A stretch of DNA of 64,000 nt, taken from assembly GCF_000150275.1 (NCBI RefSeq), contig NW_002060955.1, positions 21,240 to 85,239 on the forward strand. The letters run 5' to 3'. Below the pieces are notes generated by a model. That model saw nothing but the letters and a program-made list of their open reading frames with translations, did no database searches and was not told where the DNA came from. Positions 8,659 to 16,536 of the stretch are shown here, one piece after another. The stretch comes from Trichoplax adhaerens (taxonomy: Eukaryota; Animalia; Placozoa). Both the position numbers and the translations under genes were made by a program. Every line of letters begins with the position of its first letter. Position 1 is the stretch's first letter.

Positions 8659-9142
8659 TGCAAATCCTATCGTAATGATGGTCTTGATCAACAGCATAGA
8701 GTAGCAGACTCTCTCTCCAATCGAAGAATCTACGTGTAGAAAGTCAGTAGCATGATATCTATCCTGTTTCAAAATCAAGCAACTATCCTCATTCTGTAGA
8801 CCAGCCACCGAAAGGGTCGCAAACATGGCAATGTTTGGCCCCGCTTGTTCTACTTCGTCCTTGTAGCCAGATATTTCCAAGCTTGCAATATTATGCAAAT
8901 GCATGGTGTATTACTAATTAATTGATGATCTTTGATCGAACTTGATGATTTCTTCATTATACTAACACTATTGCTGAAGACAACATGATTACCATATTGT
9001 CCAAGATGGCCATCCCTAAACAATAGAACAGTAGGAGATCCTGACTAGGACTACTCCATTCGCCATATTAGGTAATTACTGGGCGAATAATTCATCACTC
9101 TACTATACAGTGTGCAATACTACAGTAGACTTAAGTTGGGAG

Positions 9143-9150
9143 TATAAAAA
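9143..9150 (+). promoter_or_regulatory. Putative TATA box of the CARD gene
   Basis: TATAAAAA followed by GGG. A candidate 5'-UTR intron at 9232-9343 (G|GTACTA...TTTATAG|) ends 18 nt before the ATG at 9362. Confidence 0.4.
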
Positions 9151-9361
9151 GGGAAGAAAAATTATTAATAGTAGCATCATGACTGAGGTCTGCAAATTTT
9201 CTGCATAGTTTATGTTGATAAAATTCGGAAGGTACTATCGCTGTTTGTAGTCGTTGTTTTCGATGAACAGCACTTTAGGATGTATTTTGGTGCTGTAGCA
9301 TAATGTTTAATAACATTATGCTTCTTAATTGCTTCATTTATAGACGACAAAAAAGAGAAAG

Positions 9362-9868
9362 ATGGATTCACGTCAGAGAAATACAATTATCAAGCATTTC
9401 ACCTTAATATGCCACAACATTCCGACACAGAGATCGCTAGAAAACTTTAGTCAGTTAATCAATGATGATAATCGGCGTTACTTGGATCTATTGCCCAATG
9501 ATTACCAAAAGAAAGAAACATTGTTAAACATAATCTTGCAAACGGAACGAAATAATATTTTTCAAGAATTACTTGATTTTCTATGGCAATTTAATGCTAC
9601 TGAAGGCAATTTAGGAGAGATCGTTGCAAGAACGTACAAAAATGAATTAATTCAAGTAGTTAATTGGCAGAAAAGCAGCGAGGTAAACCTTAGAAGGCAT
9701 ACTAAGACTGTGTATCGCAGCGTTAGGGAAATGCAAGATATCCTTACATCGATCCATGATCAAGGTATTTCATATTCAAAAATAGATCTTCCAGTATCAC
9801 CTACACTACCTACAATACAGCCAATAAATAAGATCTTTTTCATTCAGCAATTCAACTTCATTAAGTGA
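9362..9868 (+). CDS. CARD (death-fold) domain protein, Apaf-1-CARD-like N-terminus; standalone ORF or first coding exon
   Basis: 168-aa ORF. Residues 1 to about 92 (MDSRQRNTIIKHFTLICHNIPTQ...PNDYQKKETLLNIILQTERNN...LLDFL...NLGEIV) align by eye with the Apaf-1 CARD pattern recalled from memory (MDAKARNCLLQH...DIKT...PTQQQRAAMLIKMILKKDND). Internal donor-like sites follow 9682, 9764 and 9864. Confidence 0.7.
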   Translation: MDSRQRNTIIKHFTLICHNIPTQRSLENFSQLINDDNRRYLDLLPNDYQKKETLLNIILQTERNNIFQELLDFLWQFNATEGNLGEIVARTYKNELIQVVNWQKSSEVNLRRHTKTVYRSVREMQDILTSIHDQGISYSKIDLPVSPTLPTIQPINKIFFIQQFNFIK

Positions 9869-9874
9869 ATGTAC

Positions 9875-10316
9875 TCCTCTATCTTATGAAGAGTAGCTAC
9901 TGTTATCCAACTTAAAATTATACACTTAGCCATGATGTAGCCTATGGGAAGTAGTCCATTCTACTGCGTTAGTGTTGCATAATAATCCTCTATCTTATGA
10001 AGAGTAGCTACTGTTATCCAACTTAAAATTATACACTTAGCCATGATGTAGCCTACGTGAAGTAGTCCATTCTACTGCGTTAGTGTTGCATAATAATCCT
10101 CTATCTTATGAAGAGTAGCTACTGTTATCCAACTTAAAATTATACACTTAGCCATGATGTAGCCTACGGGAAGTAGTCCATTCTACTGCGTTAGTGTTGC
10201 ATAATAATCCTCTATCTTATGAAGAGTAGCTACTGTTATCCAACTTAAAACTTTACACTTAGCCATGATGTAGCCTATGGGAAGTAGTCAATTCTACTGC
10301 GTTAGTGTTACATAAT
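9875..10316. repeat. Tandem repeat, 111-bp unit x4, near-identical
   Basis: TCCTCTATCTTATGAAGAG... starts at 9875, 9986, 10097 and 10208, with only a few substitutions. It begins 7 nt after the CARD ORF stop. Confidence 0.97.
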
Positions 10317-10624
10317 ACAGCACTATGTTAACATGATACAGCGACATTGATCATCATTCTATGTGATCTGATAAAACATTTTTTTCTTCATGTAATCACT
10401 TGAAATGACCCATGCTCTCTATAGAAATAGCCAAGGTAATAACAGTAATTCAATTCAACCTCTTTCGTTATCATCACTGCAAGCAAAGTTTGACATAAAT
10501 TGTTATTATAAATAGCTGTAGATTAACCTTCATTGATAGGAAATTTCTTTCATTACTTGTGTACATCGAGTAAACCTATGAAATCTTTGCCATGTTTACT
10601 AAATATATACGTCATGTACTGTAG

Positions 10625-13600
10625 ATGCACGAACAAGTTGGCGATAAAATTACTTTCGTCCTGTCGGTAAGGAATGTCTCTTATTCGAGATTCGTCATTT
10701 CTCCTCGCAGTTTATACGTACTATGTCGCAGATTAAGTAGTAAATCATTTCAATTAGCCGCAATTGATTCAAATTTCTATTCAGTCGAGTAATAATGTCT
10801 GATTGCAACTAATATAGAACCTGACTTCAAAATCGACACCTCAAGAAATATACGACGCTGCTCGAATTGCAAGGTGTTTAGGCTATTTCGTAATTCTACA
10901 GCTAGTAATTAATAAACTATTCGTGGCTAGGAATTATAGCAATTAATCTATTTACAACGACAGGGCCATCATGGCAATAACTTCTATACCAGACCCAGTT
11001 ATGAGGTGCATTATCATTTTGACTGACTGTGTATGTCATGCCAACTTATTAACACTGTCATTTCCTGACTTGAAATAGATCTCAATTGGTAATTAAACTA
11101 GTTCGCTGTCTTATTCGGTCTGATAGGTATGATTTAATATTTATCGTTATGTTATAGCGAATAGATTCAATATAATTATTGTAACATCAGTGTTATTAAT
11201 TATTGTTGAACTATAAATATAAAAATAGCTCGAATCCAGAAGTTCAAGTAGAACTTTGCAGAGCTTTAAATTCATTATTAGAAAAGGACTATCGTACCTT
11301 TAAAGATGAAGGTTTTTGCAAAATTGAAATTTTTCTTAATATCTTTTACTAAAGATTTAAAAAGCATATAAATTTTGTGCTATAATACTGTCAGGTGGAG
11401 TCACAGAAAGTATTGAATTATTGTCTTCGCCCTATCCTGAGGTAGCATACCATGCTTGTGATTTGTTTACTAAGATCGCACCGTTCGTTTTCCTCGAAGA
11501 TGTCACCTTTGCCAATACTCTCTATTCTACTCTCCAAGCCTATCGACATGATGTAATTTGTAATATGTTTAAGCGGTCTAGCATTATGCGTCCATGTTAA
11601 CATGCAATCTATAATGCATACTCCGACTAACCATTGATTTTTATTACAATGCAGATGAATTTCATTAAACTGATCAGTAAAATTTTAGCTATCATGATTC
11701 ACGGTATAGGAAGTCCAATACAGCCCCAATATCTTGTTCCTGTAAATCCAATCATTAAAATTTAGAGAATAAATTCATATAGTAGTTCTTCAATTGCAAC
11801 ATTAATTCAATAACTCATATTTTATAGCTTTATCCGGTATTTAACGATTTGATTTGGTACAATGATAGAGAGGTGAGGAATTTATAAACTCTTACTACCT
11901 TGGTAACGTACTTGCCTGTCGCTGAATAATAATAATAATAGACTCTTTGATGTAGGTTATCGTAAACGTTTGCAAATCTTTCGTCGATATATTCGATGAC
12001 TCGGAGACGGACACTAACGATTTTTTATCGGTATATTTCTCTGGATAAAATTTTACAAATTTAACTTTTATTTAAATTTCCGTAATAAATAGTATAATTT
12101 AATGACAGAAAGCCGATACTTCTGATTTAACTCAAAATGTCAATTTTAATTTTTGTTTAGCATATTTTAAACTATGGTTGGTTGCCTTATATAGTCCCTC
12201 TTGTTGCTTCATCTTCAAAAGAGTTATCGGTTAACTAGGATTACATTGTCGATAGTTAATGTAAAATTGAATTTTACAATAAATTATAATAAAGTTGCTT
12301 GTTTTAATGTAAAGGAAACTTCTCTAACTGCTCTCATGAACCTCACTTATACGCCCAGATGGCGTAGAACTACCACCGAAGCTACTAGTAGATGCATAAA
12401 GGTATACGCCTACCCATAGAACACCTGCACTGAGCCTTACTGCCATTATGTAGCTTTAATAACTAAAGATACTTCGAAGATAGACACACTGAGACTGATT
12501 AATACTTTACGTTTGTAGACTGTTGTAGATTTGAAAGTGCTTGAATATCTTAAGCCACATTTTTGTGGTAACTGCGGAGTAACCTACCTTTGGGTAAGTA
12601 TCGAACTTCAATTTAGTTATTCGTTGTTACAAAACAATAAGCAAAAGAGAACTTTATTTGATTGCTGTGCATTTGGATTTAATCGTAGCAAAATATTTCT
12701 TATTAGGTATCATTATCATTACTGATTAATATATCTCTGAGTGACTTTCGACAAGTAAGATAAACATTTACATCATGATGAATTGGTTCATATGTTTAAA
12801 CTTCATAAATGCTAATCTTCTTGCACTTGGAACTTATTTAGAGTATATTTGATGCAAAATTACTGAAAAGAGTTTTGCAAATCTTAGTACAGGTAAGATT
12901 TTAGTTCGTTAACAATCAACCCACGCGCCATAGCAATTTTTTGAGTTTCGTATCAATATAAATTATCACGTTAGCCAAAGGATCTCGATATTGAAAGAAG
13001 ATCTTTTACAATCATCAGCGGCATTATTGATGGCGGTGATGTCAGTCAGGTATATTTACAAACAATGTAATTTTTTTCATCACTTCATGCTGAGATCTTT
13101 AATATTTTAAGTCAACTCAATCATTTGGTACAATAATAAATAATATCAACAATTTATTAGAATGTATACCTAGCCAAAATTGGAGTGGTAACAGCATTAT
13201 GTAATTATATGCGAAAGCAATTACAACTACACGTGGTAAAGTATTAAATTGCAAAATACAATTTACAAAGATAAAACTTTAAAATATTATGGTGGTAAAT
13301 CATTTATTTGAACAGACAGCAGATCGATGCTCCTCAGCGATTGTAAAGCATTTCGAGGTATTCTGCAACAGATGAAAAGCTTTTCAATTATACTGAATCT
13401 AAAAATACAATTATATAGCAATCAATTCTTCTAGAGTGTTAGTTGAAACATGACTTGATGTATTTTATTTTTAAAATCGTTGTTAGCATTTCAAATTTTT
13501 ATGATTACATGTCTTCTCTACGGGTATACTGTCCTCGCTGATTGAATTGTAACTGCTATAGCTAAAAATTTTTAGAATAATACTCTTTTTAAATTATGCA

Positions 13601-13941
13601 ATGTCAATATTGGGTCATAATCTGCTTGATATTTTAGTATTCTCTTCAACTAATGCTTATTAGGTCATTAAAGATACACCTATATATTCTACATTGCGAC
13701 AAGAAATGAAAGAGGATGGTTGTAAGTGTCAATCTTGAATAGCATCTAATCTTCGTTATCGTCTTAATTTATACCCTGCTCGTCAATAATATAACAGCAG
13801 AAACTAGTAATTTGATGTTCTGTTCTTTATCATAACTCATTAAAAGCTTTAGAAAAAATTCGATACATAATAAAGATGAGTTCGAAAGCAAGTATTCGAG
13901 CGCGTTTACAGGGACTCCACGCTGAATTAGCTTCAAATTAA
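10625..13941 (+). CDS. Divergent importin-alpha (karyopherin-alpha)-like armadillo-repeat protein, 20 exons, 463 aa; 5' end uncertain
   Basis: Exons 10625-10666, 10818-10873, 10964-11005, 11079-11126, 11229-11311, 11395-11552, 11655-11741, 11828-11872, 11956-12030, 12161-12229, 12315-12401, 12519-12593, 12707-12754, 12842-12892, 12975-13049, 13161-13235, 13316-13357, 13443-13523, 13664-13721 and 13847-13941. All introns are GT-AG (73-151 nt) and the 1392 nt join into one open frame. The peptides are collinear with importin-alpha ARMs as recalled: LTSKSTPQEIYDAARIAR, NPEVQVELCRALNSL, GGVTESIELLSSPYPEVAYHAC, LYPVFNDLIWYNDREVIVNVC, ETSLTALMNLT, SIFDAKLLKRVLQIL, IISGIIDGGDVSQNVYLAKIGVVTALC, EDGSLEKI. 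Confidence 0.85.
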
Positions 13942-14220
13942 ACGTATACATCTGGTACGATATGTAGGCACTTTACTACGTTAAATCCTAATGCAAAGAT
14001 TTGAAAACCGAAGCCGATTAATCCTATGTATGATTGAATTTTGAATATTTAGGCCAAGGTAAACTTGTTTAAGTGCATACGTTTATGATATCTTGTACAA
14101 AGACCAATTTGAACAAATGGCTAGGATTTCATGCCGAAATGTAACATGAATATTTAGTGTTGCAATTAACATTAGATATAATATATTAAAGCTTACAGGC
14201 TACCTGTAGAGCGGCTGTCT

Positions 14221-16536
14221 CTATAATGTATTAGAAATTATAATCGGGAATTTTAATTGTAAAGTTTTGGAAGATGGAATATTTACAAATATCTAGAAGA
14301 GATAGATTATATAAAATTAATTGATTATTTTAGTATGAAAATAAAAGCTAGTATTGACGAACATGAAGATATTTGATATAGACTATAAATTACCCAGCGA
14401 TACAAATTCTTGGTGTTGAACAATTGATATTACATTAATTATTTTACCTTCAAATAGTACTCCACTTTCAAAATATCCACCTTTGTATTGGTTGGGGACA
14501 CATCGGGTACTGTAATTACATGATCATTCCAGATCGCCCTTCCATTTGGTCGAATGGCTTCTCCAGAGGTAGATAAGCAATATACAACCTTATCTCTGTA
14601 ATAACGACCTTATAGCAAGATATACGAAGTGATTTTTGCGTAAAATGATAGGTGCACTACCCGTATATATATAATTCTAATAATTCGGTCAATCCAGTTA
14701 GAACAAACCTTCTGCTTCCCGATTGATAGTTTGCACGAATCCGGCCCAAATACCTGATAACGTTAGATTTGTGCCATTTTCCACTTGCGATGTAATAATT
14801 TTAATATCTTGACCTATTCTACATGCTGTTCGATCAATCTGTGCCCTTAGCAGCAAAGGGCCCGACTTACAACAAAAGCAACAGAGTGTTTTTTCAGTCT
14901 CCACCATTTCTGAAGGCGCCTGGACGAAAATTTATTTACGATTACAAACTGAAGAAGTTATCAAAATCACCGTAAGAATTATTAAAGAAAGGAAATATAG
15001 CTATGCTTGCAGTAATCTAAGATTGCTCTCGGATTGCCAAAATAAGTAGTAAAAATCACTTTATGCATATCTTAACAGTGATCGCATAAAGTCAAGAAGA
15101 ATCTGTAAACGTACTAAAAATAAAACGGTATCCTATCAAAAACTATGAGATCTTATAATTTCATTCTATTTAAGAATTAAGAGATAAGCTTGAAAGTAAT
15201 TACGGTATCCTATCGAAATTATGAGATCTTACAATTTCATTCTATTTAAGAATTAAGAAATATGCCCTTGCATTTATGTATGCAAATTTAATAGTACGGT
15301 TTGCAATATTTATTAGTATCATAACATGTGAAAGATGAAGCTAGTCACTGCTGCAAGTAATGATTATAAAGTGGTTTCTTTTTCATTTGAGTGTACATCA
15401 GAGTAGAAATAGAATGCCATATTTTAAAGATCGAAAAATGCAGAAACTGGTTATCTAAATCACTCCCAAATATGTACAAAGCAAACTAACTGATAATGAC
15501 AGTCACTTCCGTATAAGACCCGTGATCATAGATTAAAACCTCTGCGATTTTCTCGACTGTTGTTTAAGGCTAATATTTAAAAAATGTTTGCTTATCGTTT
15601 GTTTCAAGATATATCTTCGCGATTTAATAAGCATAATGTTTAGATGAAACTTTATAACTCTTGACATTGCATACTATTAAATTATCTATGACAAGAAATA
15701 TCTTAACTCAATTTAAGACCATCGCTAACTTACCATGAGATGACTAAGACGTGAAGGCATAGTTTCATGATAGAGGAATATTTTCTTAAATTTAACCTTC
15801 CTAGTCATAGATTCATGCGATATTAAATAAGATTTAATCATGTAACGAATGCTATTGCCATATAAACCCTCGAAGGTAGATGGTAGTTGGATTTTCGGCA
15901 ATTGAAAAGCGAAGGTAAAGTTGTATTTTCCAGGAAATAGAACTCCTGGGTTTTCCACTGTTTCAGTATCTAAACCGATGTTCAAGATAAATTAATAAAT
16001 AGTCAGTTAGGCTGGAACAGATAAAGTAAATCAGAATTTTCCACTTCAAATTAAAGAAATAGAAGAGACAAAGTTCGTATTGTGATCAGGAATGATCGAA
16101 ATATTAAAAATAGTATTTCGCTTCTAAAAATTTTTACAGAAAGGTGGTACCTCGTTCAAAGCGATAATTTATATTGAGCAATTCTCATCTACTGATTTGC
16201 AGACATTAAAATAATGAACAGGCTTAAAATTACTACTATAAATGTTAACTAAGGAAATGACCCAAGTAAAAGATTACCGGTACTTAACATACCTTCTGTA
16301 CTTGCGGTGATCATGGAATCAATAATATTACGCTTACTGTAAGCGTATCTCAAATCGTTTGTAGGTCCATACTGAATTTGAGTCTTCGCTCTGCCATGAA
16401 TTCGAACTTGAATACATTGAATTGTTAACGGATTTTTCAATTCTAAATGAATATGTCCAGATACAATATCACGAGCATGATAGATTTCTTGTAAATCATC
16501 GAGAAATATATAATAGGATAGAATTGTTTGAGGCAT
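14221..16536 (-). CDS. Alpha-arrestin gene 2 (inverted, no C-terminal tail), 5 exons, 307 aa
   Basis: Exons 16536-16293, 15969-15734, 14919-14709, 14608-14448 and 14292-14221, GT-AG with phases 1,0,1,0. Motifs GKYNFTFAFQLP, LPSTFEG..GNSIRY, LCCFCCKSGP, VSPTN, LKVEYYLK and FPIIISNTL*. Confidence 0.9.
15125..15258. repeat. Direct duplication (77-bp period, 2 copies) in intron 2 of arrestin gene 2
   Basis: ACGGTATCCTATC...TGAGATCTTA.AATTTCATTCTATTTAAGAATTAAGA at 15125 and 15202. Confidence 0.85.

What the first reader, a model, noticed from the sequence alone, without database searches (positions are those of the whole stretch)
9362..13941. Possible CARD-importin-alpha-ARM fusion gene: a death-fold domain in place of the IBB
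Seen: the CARD ORF is on the same strand about 750 bp upstream of the ARM gene, whose first exon (10625) begins directly after an acceptor AG. Two in-frame splice routes exist. (a) The phase-0 donor GAG|GTAAAC after 9682, just past the CARD, joins directly to 10625. (b) The phase-1 donor CAAG|GTATTT after 9764 joins an 11-nt micro-exon at 10425-10435 (CTCTCTATAG|AAATAGCCAAG|GTAATA) and then 10625. The only TATA-plus-leader-intron arrangement I noticed lies upstream of the CARD. Inference: a CARD plus ARM-sensor protein, possibly a decoy or guard-type innate-immune or apoptotic receptor. I do not know this architecture from characterised proteins.
Basis: partly seen in the sequence, partly recalled or inferred. 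Interest (0 to 1): 0.9.

Follow-up and report, generated by a model that had tools for sequence, protein, structure and literature searches.

The report
CARD fused to importin-alpha-like ARM protein
In the placozoan Trichoplax adhaerens, one spliced gene joins a divergent caspase-recruitment (CARD) domain, through an 11-base micro-exon, to an importin-alpha-like armadillo solenoid that has lost its importin-beta-binding domain and nearly all its NLS-binding residues; I found no report of this domain combination.

Summary
RNA contigs from three studies splice 9764 to the 11-nt micro-exon 10425-10435 and then to 10625. It gives a 21-exon, 574-codon ORF (9362-13941).

The window is Trichoplax adhaerens. 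Two public models, TRIADDRAFT_59941 and the Trichoplax sp. H2 "Importin subunit alpha-1a, partial", already join the two parts. They use route (a), which no laid contig shows, and neither has a CARD among its precomputed Pfam domains.

A contig from a divergent relative keeps the phase-1 donor, an 11-nt micro-exon and identical exon sizes. It has no route (a) donor.

The N-terminal domain fails Pfam CARD, but it matches a profile of 24 Pfam-verified Trichoplax CARD exons end to end (hhalign 95%; shuffles at most 2.3%). It models as a CARD with a kinked helix 1.

The ARM part aligns collinearly with the importin-alpha core (E 7e-9; Atlas TM 0.81-0.83). It has no IBB and keeps only one of the five NLS tryptophans.

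The gene is single-copy and appears confined to placozoans.

Function is inferred only. The most likely role is a CARD adaptor or sensor with a repurposed ARM groove. The guard or decoy idea is untested.

This is a new domain architecture built from known domains.

The parts
9143..9150 (+). TATA-like box (GTATAAAA) upstream of the transcript
   Evidence: Sequence. The X4 contig starts at 9202, with an Illumina adapter as a loose end at 9196. This fits a 5' end near 9175-9200. Promoter function is inferred only.
9197..9361 (+).
   Evidence: X4 contig 9202-9371 and X5 contig 9240-9764 are unspliced here. The leader contains five upstream ATGs.
9362..9646 (+). CARD domain, residues 1-95 (first part of exon 1)
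   Evidence: hhalign against 24 Pfam-verified Trichoplax CARD exons gives prob 95.4%, E 2e-8 and 89 columns; shuffles reach at most 2.3%. An HMM of those CARDs scores 19.0 bits. AF2 with alignment A3 gives pLDDT 94 and a kinked H1a/H1b. VIA gives Z 10-11 to the caspase-9, Apaf-1, RIG-I and CED-4 CARDs. Pfam CARD itself gives no hit.
9647..9764 (+). Conserved helical linker, residues 96-134 (rest of exon 1); ends at the phase-1 donor CAAG|GTATTT
   Evidence: It lies in the spliced RNA contigs. The VYRSV..M..I...I motif is invariant between the two species. It is modelled as a continuation of helix 6. Both public models omit residues 108-134.
9683..9688 (+). Route (a) donor GTAAAC: used by the public gene models, not seen in RNA
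   Evidence: No joint from 9682 is listed. There is no GT at the equivalent place in L001.
9765..10424 (+). Intron 1 (660 nt), which holds a 111-bp tandem repeat x4 at 9875-10317
   Evidence: Joint. Tandem repeat. The repeat is found nowhere else in the genome.
10425..10435 (+). 11-nt micro-exon AAATAGCCAAG; it restores the frame (phase 1 to phase 0) and encodes (E)IAK
   Evidence: Its letters lie between the two sides of the joint in X4, X5 and X11 (table 5c). It is unique in the window. L001 has an 11-nt counterpart, AAATTGAGCAG, at 1236-1246 with the same flanks, AG|..|GTAATA.
10436..10624 (+). Intron 2 (189 nt)
10625..10666 (+). Exon 3 (42 nt); starts with an ATG that is conserved in L001
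10818..10873 (+). Exon 4 (56 nt)
   Evidence: Joints; frame.
10964..11005 (+). Exon 5 (42 nt); missing from model P0001
11079..11126 (+). Exon 6 (48 nt)
11229..11311 (+). Exon 7 (83 nt); at the ARM2 NLS site, W is R and N is S
   Evidence: alignment. L001 keeps the W (ELCWALQS).
11395..11552 (+). Exon 8 (158 nt); at the ARM3 site, W is D and N is K
11655..11741 (+). Exon 9 (87 nt); missing from P0001
   Evidence: X5 record 14.
11828..11872 (+). Exon 10 (45 nt)
   Evidence: the joint 11872>11956 is. The acceptor at 11828 is inferred from the frame and from P0004.
11956..12030 (+). Exon 11 (75 nt)
12161..12229 (+). Exon 12 (69 nt); missing from P0001
   Evidence: The donor after 12229 is inferred from the frame and from P0004.
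12315..12401 (+). Exon 13 (87 nt)
12519..12593 (+). Exon 14 (75 nt); carries the one retained NLS-site tryptophan (ARM7)
12707..12754 (+). Exon 15 (48 nt)
12842..12892 (+). Exon 16 (51 nt)
12975..13049 (+). Exon 17 (75 nt); at the ARM8 site, W is T and N is G
13161..13235 (+). Exon 18 (75 nt)
   Evidence: The donor after 13235 is inferred from the frame and from P0004.
13316..13357 (+). Exon 19 (42 nt)
13664..13721 (+). Exon 20 (58 nt)
   Evidence: P0001 reads through its donor.
13847..13941 (+). Exon 21, coding part; stop codon TAA at 13939-13941
   Evidence: P0004 ends at the same place.
13955..14052 (+). GT..AG intron in the 3' UTR, starting 13 nt after the stop codon
   Evidence: Joint in X4 and X5; splice sites.

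Best explanation
Positions 9362-13941 (+) form one single-copy Trichoplax adhaerens gene of 21 coding exons, encoding a 574-residue protein in three parts.

1. A divergent, placozoan-type CARD (residues 1-95).
2. A conserved helical linker (residues 96-138), whose last four codons are completed by an 11-nt micro-exon.
3. A ten-repeat ARM solenoid derived from importin alpha (about residues 139-574).

The CARD sits where importin alpha carries its IBB domain. The IBB is gone and four of the five NLS-binding tryptophans are replaced, so the protein is very unlikely to act as a nuclear-import adaptor.

The architecture and the transcript are shown. The mechanism is inferred from what the two domain families do. 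I propose that the ARM groove binds a non-classical peptide or protein ligand. The CARD would then couple that binding, through homotypic CARD-CARD assembly, to one of the many CARD proteins of placozoans: Apaf-1 paralogues, two CARD-caspases, and CARD-TIR adaptors. On this reading the protein is an adaptor or sensor in a cell-death or innate-immune pathway.

I put the architecture at about 0.9 and the adaptor/sensor mechanism at about 0.4-0.5.
For: Transcript:
- The splice 9764 > micro-exon > 10625 is present in contigs from three RNA studies. A 1696-nt contig carries exon 1 and the ARM exons together.
- All 21 exons are in frame, 1725 nt, with no internal stop.

Conservation:
- L001, the orthologous contig of a divergent relative, has 44% identity in exon 1.
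- It has the same phase-1 donor, an 11-nt micro-exon, and exon sizes of 400(403)/11/42/56/42/48/83/158/87/45.
- dN/dS for exon 1 is 0.38.

CARD:
- hhalign of the two-species N-terminal alignment against 24 Pfam-verified Trichoplax CARD exons gives prob 95.4%, E 2e-8, and runs end to end. Sixty column shuffles reach at most 2.3%.
- An HMM of those CARDs scores 19.0 bits (window) and 26.5 bits (L001).
- Five of the six weak own-genome tblastn hits of the ORF fall on loci that Pfam CARD also hits, four of them above its cut-off.
- The ESM feature neighbours shown are CARD clusters, apart from one without a family (0.86-0.87; a lead only).
- The AF2 model has pLDDT 94 and a kinked H1. Foldseek and VIA top hits are the Apaf-1, caspase-9, RIG-I and CED-4 CARDs, with Z 10-11 and rmsd 2.1-2.5 over 87-95 residues.

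ARM:
- P0004 residues 140-535 align collinearly with importin alpha 21-411, E 7e-9.
- All ten nearest Atlas structures are importin alpha, TM 0.81-0.83.

Other:
- There is no IBB here; IBB exons occur elsewhere in the genome.
- The gene is single-copy.
- Placozoan CARD partners exist (PMC6321704).
Against: - The Pfam CARD model does not hit the ORF even at E 10.
- AF2 without an alignment gave only pLDDT 42.
- The confident AF2 model used an alignment dominated by known CARDs, so the fold search is not independent of the homology call.
- The RNA evidence consists of assembled contigs, not reads. Isoform ratios, transcript ends and minor forms are therefore not visible. Such forms include route (a), a CARD-only transcript, and an ARM-only transcript starting at the conserved ATG of exon 3.
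- There are no functional data at all: no partner, no ligand, no localisation.
Confidence: 0.8

Rival explanations
1. These are two separate genes, a CARD-only gene and an IBB-less ARM gene. The joined RNA would then be an occasional read-through or conjoined transcript with no function of its own.
For: - Exon 3 begins with an ATG that is conserved in both species.
- An AATAAA lies at 9823, just inside intron 1.
- Contigs cannot show transcript ends.
Against: - The joined form is the one assembled in three independent studies. In X5 it lies on a single 1696-nt contig running from exon 1 into the ARM exons.
- X5 and X11 show no coverage beyond 9764 other than what exon 1 accounts for (table 2).
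- The 11-nt frame-restoring micro-exon and the phase-1 donor are conserved in a species whose introns no longer align. The linker between them shows protein-level conservation.
Confidence: 0.05
2. The N-terminal domain is not a CARD. It would be an unrelated small helical bundle that resembles one only by composition and helix pattern.
For: - Pfam CARD, Death, DED and PYRIN models give no hit at E 10.
- phmmer against the PDB gives nothing.
- The single-sequence AF2 model is poor.
- VIA notes that Z under about 13 can arise between unrelated helical bundles.
Against: - The hhalign score is 46.5, against 11.3 +/- 1.9 for shuffles, and the match is collinear over the full domain.
- The ORF's own weak genome hits land on Pfam-verified CARD exons in five of six cases.
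- ESM features point to CARD clusters.
- The CARD-specific break in helix 1 is modelled.
- The 21 best structural matches are all CARDs, apart from one de novo design; death domains appear only from rank 22.
Confidence: 0.07
3. The architecture is the same, but the role is inhibitory or regulatory. The CARD would sequester CARD-caspases or Apaf-1 paralogues, as CARD-only proteins and ARC do. Alternatively it would fold back on the ARM groove as the IBB does in importin alpha. The ARM part would mainly set location or stability.
For: - The structural neighbours include ICEBERG and ARC.
- The protein has no oligomerisation module (NB-ARC or NACHT) and no enzymatic domain.
- The position of the CARD mimics that of the auto-inhibitory IBB.
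Against: Nothing speaks directly against it. It differs from the best explanation only in the sign of the output. A cis fold-back has no sequence support, because the NLS groove residues that hold the IBB are replaced.
Confidence: 0.2
4. It is a working importin alpha variant, a nuclear-import adaptor with an unusual N-terminus.
For: - The Trichoplax sp. H2 annotation names it "Importin subunit alpha-1a, partial".
- The whole ARM core is collinear with importin alpha.
Against: - There is no IBB by Pfam in the protein or the locus.
- The W/N pairs of ARM2, 3, 4 and 8 are replaced, and only the ARM7 W is kept (alignment).
- There is no Arm_3 hit.
- IBB exons, as expected of canonical importin-alpha genes, occur elsewhere in the genome.
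Confidence: 0.03

Closest known systems
Importin alpha (karyopherin alpha, KPNA family)
   Same: The ARM core is collinear with importin alpha over about 400 residues (E 7e-9 to 1e-6 against many PDB importin alphas). The Atlas model superposes on importin-alpha clusters at TM 0.81-0.83. The alignment begins just after the position of the IBB.
   Different: It has no IBB and no Arm_3 hit. Four of the five NLS-site tryptophans and all five asparagines are replaced. A CARD stands at the N-terminus. Divergence is extreme: no relative outside placozoans reached E 1e-3 in two very large protein libraries.
CARDs of Apaf-1 / CED-4 / caspase-9 and the expanded placozoan Apaf-1 family (Kamm et al. 2019, PMC6321704)
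   Same: The domain has the same fold and the same length. It shows profile-level homology to the CARD exons of the same genome. One of the CARD exons the ORF weakly matches (C1392:614424) lies 3.6 kb upstream of an NB-ARC exon.
   Different: It scores below the Pfam CARD threshold. No NB-ARC, WD40 or caspase domain follows it; an ARM solenoid does.
Bipartite CARD adaptors and regulators (RAIDD, BCL10, ARC/NOL3, cIAP1; from my own knowledge of these families)
   Same: They share the logic of one CARD plus one other protein-interaction module, with no enzymatic or nucleotide-binding domain. Several appear among the structural matches.
   Different: None of them, to my knowledge, carries ARM repeats. 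No paper found in the library describes a CARD-ARM or CARD-importin-alpha protein.
Integrated-decoy immune receptors of plants (concept only; my own knowledge)
   Same: A copy of a host protein that pathogens commonly target is fused to a signalling domain.
   Different: There is no NLR core here, and there is no evidence that this protein meets any pathogen molecule. The NLS groove that a decoy of importin alpha would need is degraded.

Membership tests
CARD (Pfam PF00619, death-fold superfamily) | Match to the curated Pfam CARD profile above its gathering score | tested here: not met
   hmmscan of the ORF at E up to 10 lists no CARD, Death, DED or PYRIN hit. In the six-frame genome scan with PF00619, none of the 67 matches falls on this locus.
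CARD (Pfam PF00619, death-fold superfamily) | Detectable homology to bona fide CARDs over the whole domain | tested here: met
   hhalign A2 vs A1 gives prob 95.4%, E 2e-8, with columns 4-93 against 2-93. Reversed and shuffled controls reach at most 2.3%. An HMM of the Trichoplax CARDs scores 19.0 and 26.5 bits. The ORF's weak own-genome hits coincide with CARD loci.
CARD (Pfam PF00619, death-fold superfamily) | Six-helix antiparallel bundle with helix 1 broken into H1a/H1b | tested here: met
   The AF2 model (pLDDT 94.2) has helices 3-11, 13-19, 22-28, 35-43, 47-60, 66-74 and 84 onwards. VIA gives Z 10-11 to the caspase-9, Apaf-1, RIG-I and CED-4 CARDs. Caveat: the alignment given to AF2 consisted mostly of known CARDs, and the single-sequence model was poor.
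CARD (Pfam PF00619, death-fold superfamily) | Homotypic CARD-CARD binding or filament formation | not testable with these tools
   Needs pull-down, yeast two-hybrid or filament assays with placozoan CARD proteins.
Importin alpha | N-terminal IBB domain (PF01749) that binds importin beta | tested here: not met
   There is no IBB hit in P0004 or P0001. The genome scan finds IBB exons only on contig C1410, not in this locus. A CARD occupies the position.
Importin alpha | Ten ARM repeats collinear with the family | tested here: met
   Single collinear HMMER alignments, P0004 130-539 against importin alpha residues 18-445 (or 86-488 in full-length numbering), with E 7e-9 to 4e-6. Atlas structure TM 0.81-0.83 over 401-413 residues.
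Importin alpha | W-x-x-x-N arrays of the major (ARM2-4) and minor (ARM7-8) NLS sites | tested here: not met
   Read from the alignment to 8g4j_A. ARM2: W>R, N>S. ARM3: W>D, N>K. ARM4: W>K, N>I. ARM7: W kept, N lost. ARM8: W>T, N>G. The alignment has low posterior probability in places. L001 keeps the ARM2 W.
Importin alpha | C-terminal atypical repeat (Arm_3, PF16186; CAS/exportin-binding region) | tested here: inconclusive
   There is no Arm_3 hit at E 1, but the structural alignment runs to residues 548-549 of P0004.
NLR / Apaf-1-like receptors | Central NB-ARC or NACHT NTPase domain | tested here: not met
   There is no such Pfam hit in the protein. None of the 43 NB-ARC matches in the genome lies on contig C1402, the window's contig.

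The most novel reading that the evidence does not exclude
The protein is an animal "integrated decoy". A degenerate copy of the nuclear-import receptor importin alpha would trap a viral, bacterial or symbiont factor that targets importin alpha. Through its CARD it would then nucleate a caspase- or Apaf-1-dependent death or defence response. That would be a guard-type sensor without an NLR core, in one of the simplest animals.
Probability: 0.08. Interest if true: 0.85.

Novelty: new variant of a known kind. Interest (0 to 1): 0.6.

Why it matters
Death-fold domains are the connectors of animal cell-death and innate-immune signalling. Which modules they are attached to shows what a lineage can sense.

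Placozoans lack true TLRs, LRR-type NLRs and RIG-I-like receptors, but they have expanded their Apaf-1 and CARD genes (PMC6321704). A conserved CARD fused to a repurposed importin-alpha solenoid adds an input or adaptor module of a kind not described elsewhere. It gives a concrete, clonable candidate for asking what feeds the placozoan CARD network.

It is also a clear case of domain replacement (IBB to CARD) made possible by an 11-nt micro-exon.

Finally, it corrects both public gene models. Both omit 31 residues of conserved linker, and TRIADDRAFT_59941 also lacks three exons and the true C-terminus.

Tried and rejected
- Pfam on the ORF gave only sub-threshold noise (GCP_C_terminal, DUF7380). 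I rejected these as chance.
- phmmer of the ORF against the PDB found nothing meaningful.
- AF2 of the ORF without an alignment gave pLDDT 42, which is unusable.
- A full HMMER scan of 1.84 billion representatives found only the same gene (P0001), one orthologous fragment (P0002) and a repeat protein that matches the translated intron (P0003). No outside relatives were available for a deeper alignment.
- Route (a) is used by both public models, but it is absent from the laid contigs and its donor is absent in L001. I reject it as the main form.
- The paralogue search found none: the gene and the intronic 111-bp repeat are both unique in the genome.
- The hit to ARM_ARMC5 (27.7 bits against a cut-off of 79.9), and the ESM feature neighbours ARMC8 and RAP1GDS1, I treat as generic ARM similarity rather than membership.
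- The profile A3 against the PDB hits Apaf-1 and other CARDs strongly. The 24 known CARDs drive this, so I do not count it as evidence for the ORF.
- Literature searches for the gene identifiers and for CARD plus armadillo architectures found nothing relevant. Kamm et al. 2019 and its supplements do not list this gene.

Full report
**What is there**

The window is AT-rich eukaryotic DNA (30-35% GC). An exact look-up identifies it as Trichoplax adhaerens. The best hit of the ORF is XP_002115973.1 / TRIADDRAFT_59941 / UniProt B3S6V4, an "uncharacterized protein" of 460 aa. The window lies at G000:C1402:21240-85239.

**The fusion is transcribed, by route (b)**

I laid contigs from four public runs on 8800-14300.

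Three runs from three different studies (X4, X5, X11; X11 is on record as RNA-Seq) carry spliced contigs. All three show the same joint: 9764, then the letters AAATAGCCA, then 10623/10625 (tables 5 and 5c). The micro-exon AAATAGCCAAG ends in AG, and so does the intron before 10625. The aligner therefore placed the last two letters on the genome. The 11-mer occurs once in the 64-kb window, at 10425.

One X5 contig of 1696 nt runs from 9240 to 9764 without a break and then through the ARM exons to at least 12399. The fourth run (X7) has only unspliced pieces and looks like DNA.

Route (a), 9682 to 10625, is not among the listed joints. Contigs drop rare variants and nine joints were not shown, so a minor form cannot be excluded.

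In X5 and X11, depth in the bin 9720-9903 is fully explained by exon 1 ending at 9764. There is therefore no visible CARD-only read-through form.

**Gene model**

From the joints, with four splice sites filled in by frame and by the public model P0004, I get 21 coding exons from 9362 to 13941. They total 1725 nt, which is 574 codons plus the stop, with GT-AG at every intron and no internal stop.

I handled the exons one by one, by reference. The script only walked the codons to check phase and stops. Wherever a whole protein was needed, I used the public model P0004. It differs from the RNA-supported form by lacking 31 residues: 27 of exon 1 and 4 completed by the micro-exon.

**The public models already fuse the two parts, but wrongly**

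P0001 (T. adhaerens) and P0004 (Trichoplax sp. H2, named "Importin subunit alpha-1a, partial") both join ...NWQKSSE directly to MHEQ..., which is route (a). P0001 also lacks exons 5, 9 and 12 and reads through the donor of exon 20. Neither has a CARD among its precomputed Pfam domains.

So the fusion as such is not new. The true junction and the identity of the N-terminal domain are.

**Conservation**

The only other relative among 1.84 billion representatives is P0002. Trichoplax has no paralogue, so L001 comes from another species.

L001 is the orthologous locus.
- Exon 1 is 44% identical and ends at a phase-1 donor, AAAG|GTAATC.
- An 11-nt micro-exon, AAATTGAGCAG, lies between AG and GTAATA.
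- The next exon again starts with ATG.
- The first ten exon sizes are 400/11/42/56/42/48/83/158/87/45, against 403/11/42/56/42/48/83/158/87/45 in the window.
- There is no GT at the place of the route (a) donor.
- The 27 residues that the public models skip contain the invariant motif VYRSV..M..I...I.
- dN/dS for exon 1 is 0.38, with dS about 1.2, close to saturation.

This argues strongly for one gene under selection in its fused form.

**Is the N-terminal domain a CARD?**

By the curated test it is not. Pfam gives no CARD, Death, DED or PYRIN hit at E 10, and a six-frame scan of the genome with PF00619 does not pick up this locus.

Four other lines say that it is.

1. The ORF's own weak tblastn hits in the genome (E 0.07 to 5) fall on loci that the Pfam CARD model also hits in five of six cases, four of them above its cut-off.
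2. A two-species alignment of the domain (A2), compared with an alignment of 24 Pfam-verified Trichoplax CARD exons (A1), gives hhalign probability 95.4% and E 2e-8. The match covers 89 columns from one end of the domain to the other. The reversed alignment gives 1.2%, and 60 column shuffles give at most 2.3%. The score is 46.5 against 11.3 +/- 1.9 for the shuffles. An HMM of A1 scores 19.0 bits on the window and 26.5 bits on L001.
3. ESM feature neighbours are CARD clusters at 0.86-0.87. By the tool's own standards this is only a lead.
4. AF2 with alignment A3 gives pLDDT 94.2. The model has six helices, including the CARD-typical break of helix 1 (3-11 and 13-19), and a sixth helix that runs on through the linker to residue 132.
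   - Foldseek puts Apaf-1 CARD first (TM by target 0.69-0.76).
   - VIA gives Z 10-11 and rmsd 2.1-2.5 over 87-95 residues to the caspase-9, Apaf-1, RIG-I and CED-4 CARDs. Death domains appear only lower, at Z 8.9.
   - Caveat: A3 is mostly known CARDs, and the single-sequence model was poor (pLDDT 42). Line 4 therefore depends on line 2.

I conclude that it is a divergent CARD, at about 0.9.

**Is the ARM part importin-alpha-like?**

With the complete model P0004, residues 130-539 align in one collinear stretch with dozens of solved importin alphas, at E 7e-9 to 4e-6. Apart from designed armadillo-repeat proteins (and one Maltose-binding-free designed scaffold set, all artificial), no other natural family appears. 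All ten nearest structural clusters to the Atlas's own MSA-free model of P0004 are importin alpha, at TM 0.81-0.83 over 401-413 residues.

The alignment starts where the IBB-less crystallisation constructs start, so the CARD and linker occupy the place of the IBB. Pfam finds no IBB and no Arm_3. IBB exons occur elsewhere in the genome, on C1410.

Reading the W-x-x-x-N sites off the alignment:

| Site | W | N |
|---|---|---|
| ARM2 | replaced by R | replaced by S |
| ARM3 | replaced by D | replaced by K |
| ARM4 | replaced by K | replaced by I |
| ARM7 | kept | lost |
| ARM8 | replaced by T | replaced by G |

L001 still has the ARM2 tryptophan (ELCWALQS). That fits descent from an importin alpha followed by decay of the NLS groove.

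**How it probably works (inferred)**

Without an IBB and without the NLS sites, the protein cannot be expected to carry cargo to importin beta. What remains is a peptide-binding solenoid tied by a rigid-looking helix to a homotypic assembly domain.

Placozoans have many possible CARD partners. The genome holds at least 35 CARD exons above the Pfam cut-off. Some sit next to NB-ARC exons and two sit next to caspase exons. This agrees with the twelve Apaf-1 homologues, two CARD-caspases and CARD-TIR proteins reported for Trichoplax sp. H2 (PMC6321704).

The most economical mechanism is an adaptor or sensor. The ARM groove binds a ligand, and the CARD recruits or nucleates a CARD partner. An inhibitory, CARD-only-like role is the main alternative.

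**Novelty**

I found no paper on this gene, or on any CARD-ARM or CARD-importin protein, in the library. The placozoan immunity survey and its supplements do not list it. No relative outside placozoans reached significance.

I classify it as a new domain architecture built from known domains, restricted to placozoans as far as can be seen.

**Earlier notes of this scan**

The scan had two other notes on the same stretch. One described a 20-exon importin-alpha-like gene without an IBB or the NLS tryptophans. The other described an Apaf-1-like CARD ORF with no NB-ARC or caspase nearby. Both agree with what I tested.

Noticed in passing
window 9875-10317: A 111-bp tandem repeat, 4.0 copies at 97% identity, lies inside intron 1. 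It is found nowhere else in the 105-Mb genome. The Trichoplax sp. H2 gene span is about 114 bp shorter (4484 vs 4598 bp), which would fit one copy fewer. I did not check this by alignment.
   Followed up: partly
window 13955-14052: A GT..AG intron is spliced out in X4 and X5 only 13 nt after the stop codon, so the 3' UTR carries an intron. The first AATAAA after the stop is at 14340.
   Followed up: partly
window 14293-14449: An X5 contig jumps from 14294 to 14450. The skipped stretch reads CT..AC once the cut is shifted by two, so it is an intron of a minus-strand transcript. In Trichoplax sp. H2 the next gene is a convergent arrestin-domain gene. Its 3' end appears to overlap the 3' UTR of the CARD-ARM gene.
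   Followed up: partly
L042 (Trichoplax sp. H2, NOWV01000076.1:17771-42254): The gene sits in a cluster of arrestin-domain (Arrestin_N/Arrestin_C) genes, on both sides and on both strands.
   Followed up: no
window 10625-10627 and L001 1566-1568: Exon 3 starts with an in-frame ATG in both species. This could be a relic of the former start codon, or the start of an ARM-only isoform from a promoter in intron 2. There is no RNA evidence either way.
   Followed up: no
window 9197-9361: The unspliced leader seen in the RNA contigs holds five upstream ATGs. One X4 contig ends exactly at the proposed leader-intron acceptor (9342), which hints that spliced and unspliced leaders coexist.
   Followed up: no
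G000 contigs C1404:1.69-1.97 Mb, C1397:1.11-1.23 Mb, C1398:76-84 kb: CARD exons in T. adhaerens occur in tandem clusters. There are 67 PF00619 matches, at least 35 of them over the cut-off, and near-identical copies also lie on small unplaced contigs.
   Followed up: no
window 8858-13979 (run X7, organism B): X7 contigs are unspliced and differ from the window at about 20 sites, with one 1-bp insertion (tables 3 and 4). They look like DNA of a closely related strain or haplotype under a different organism label.
   Followed up: no
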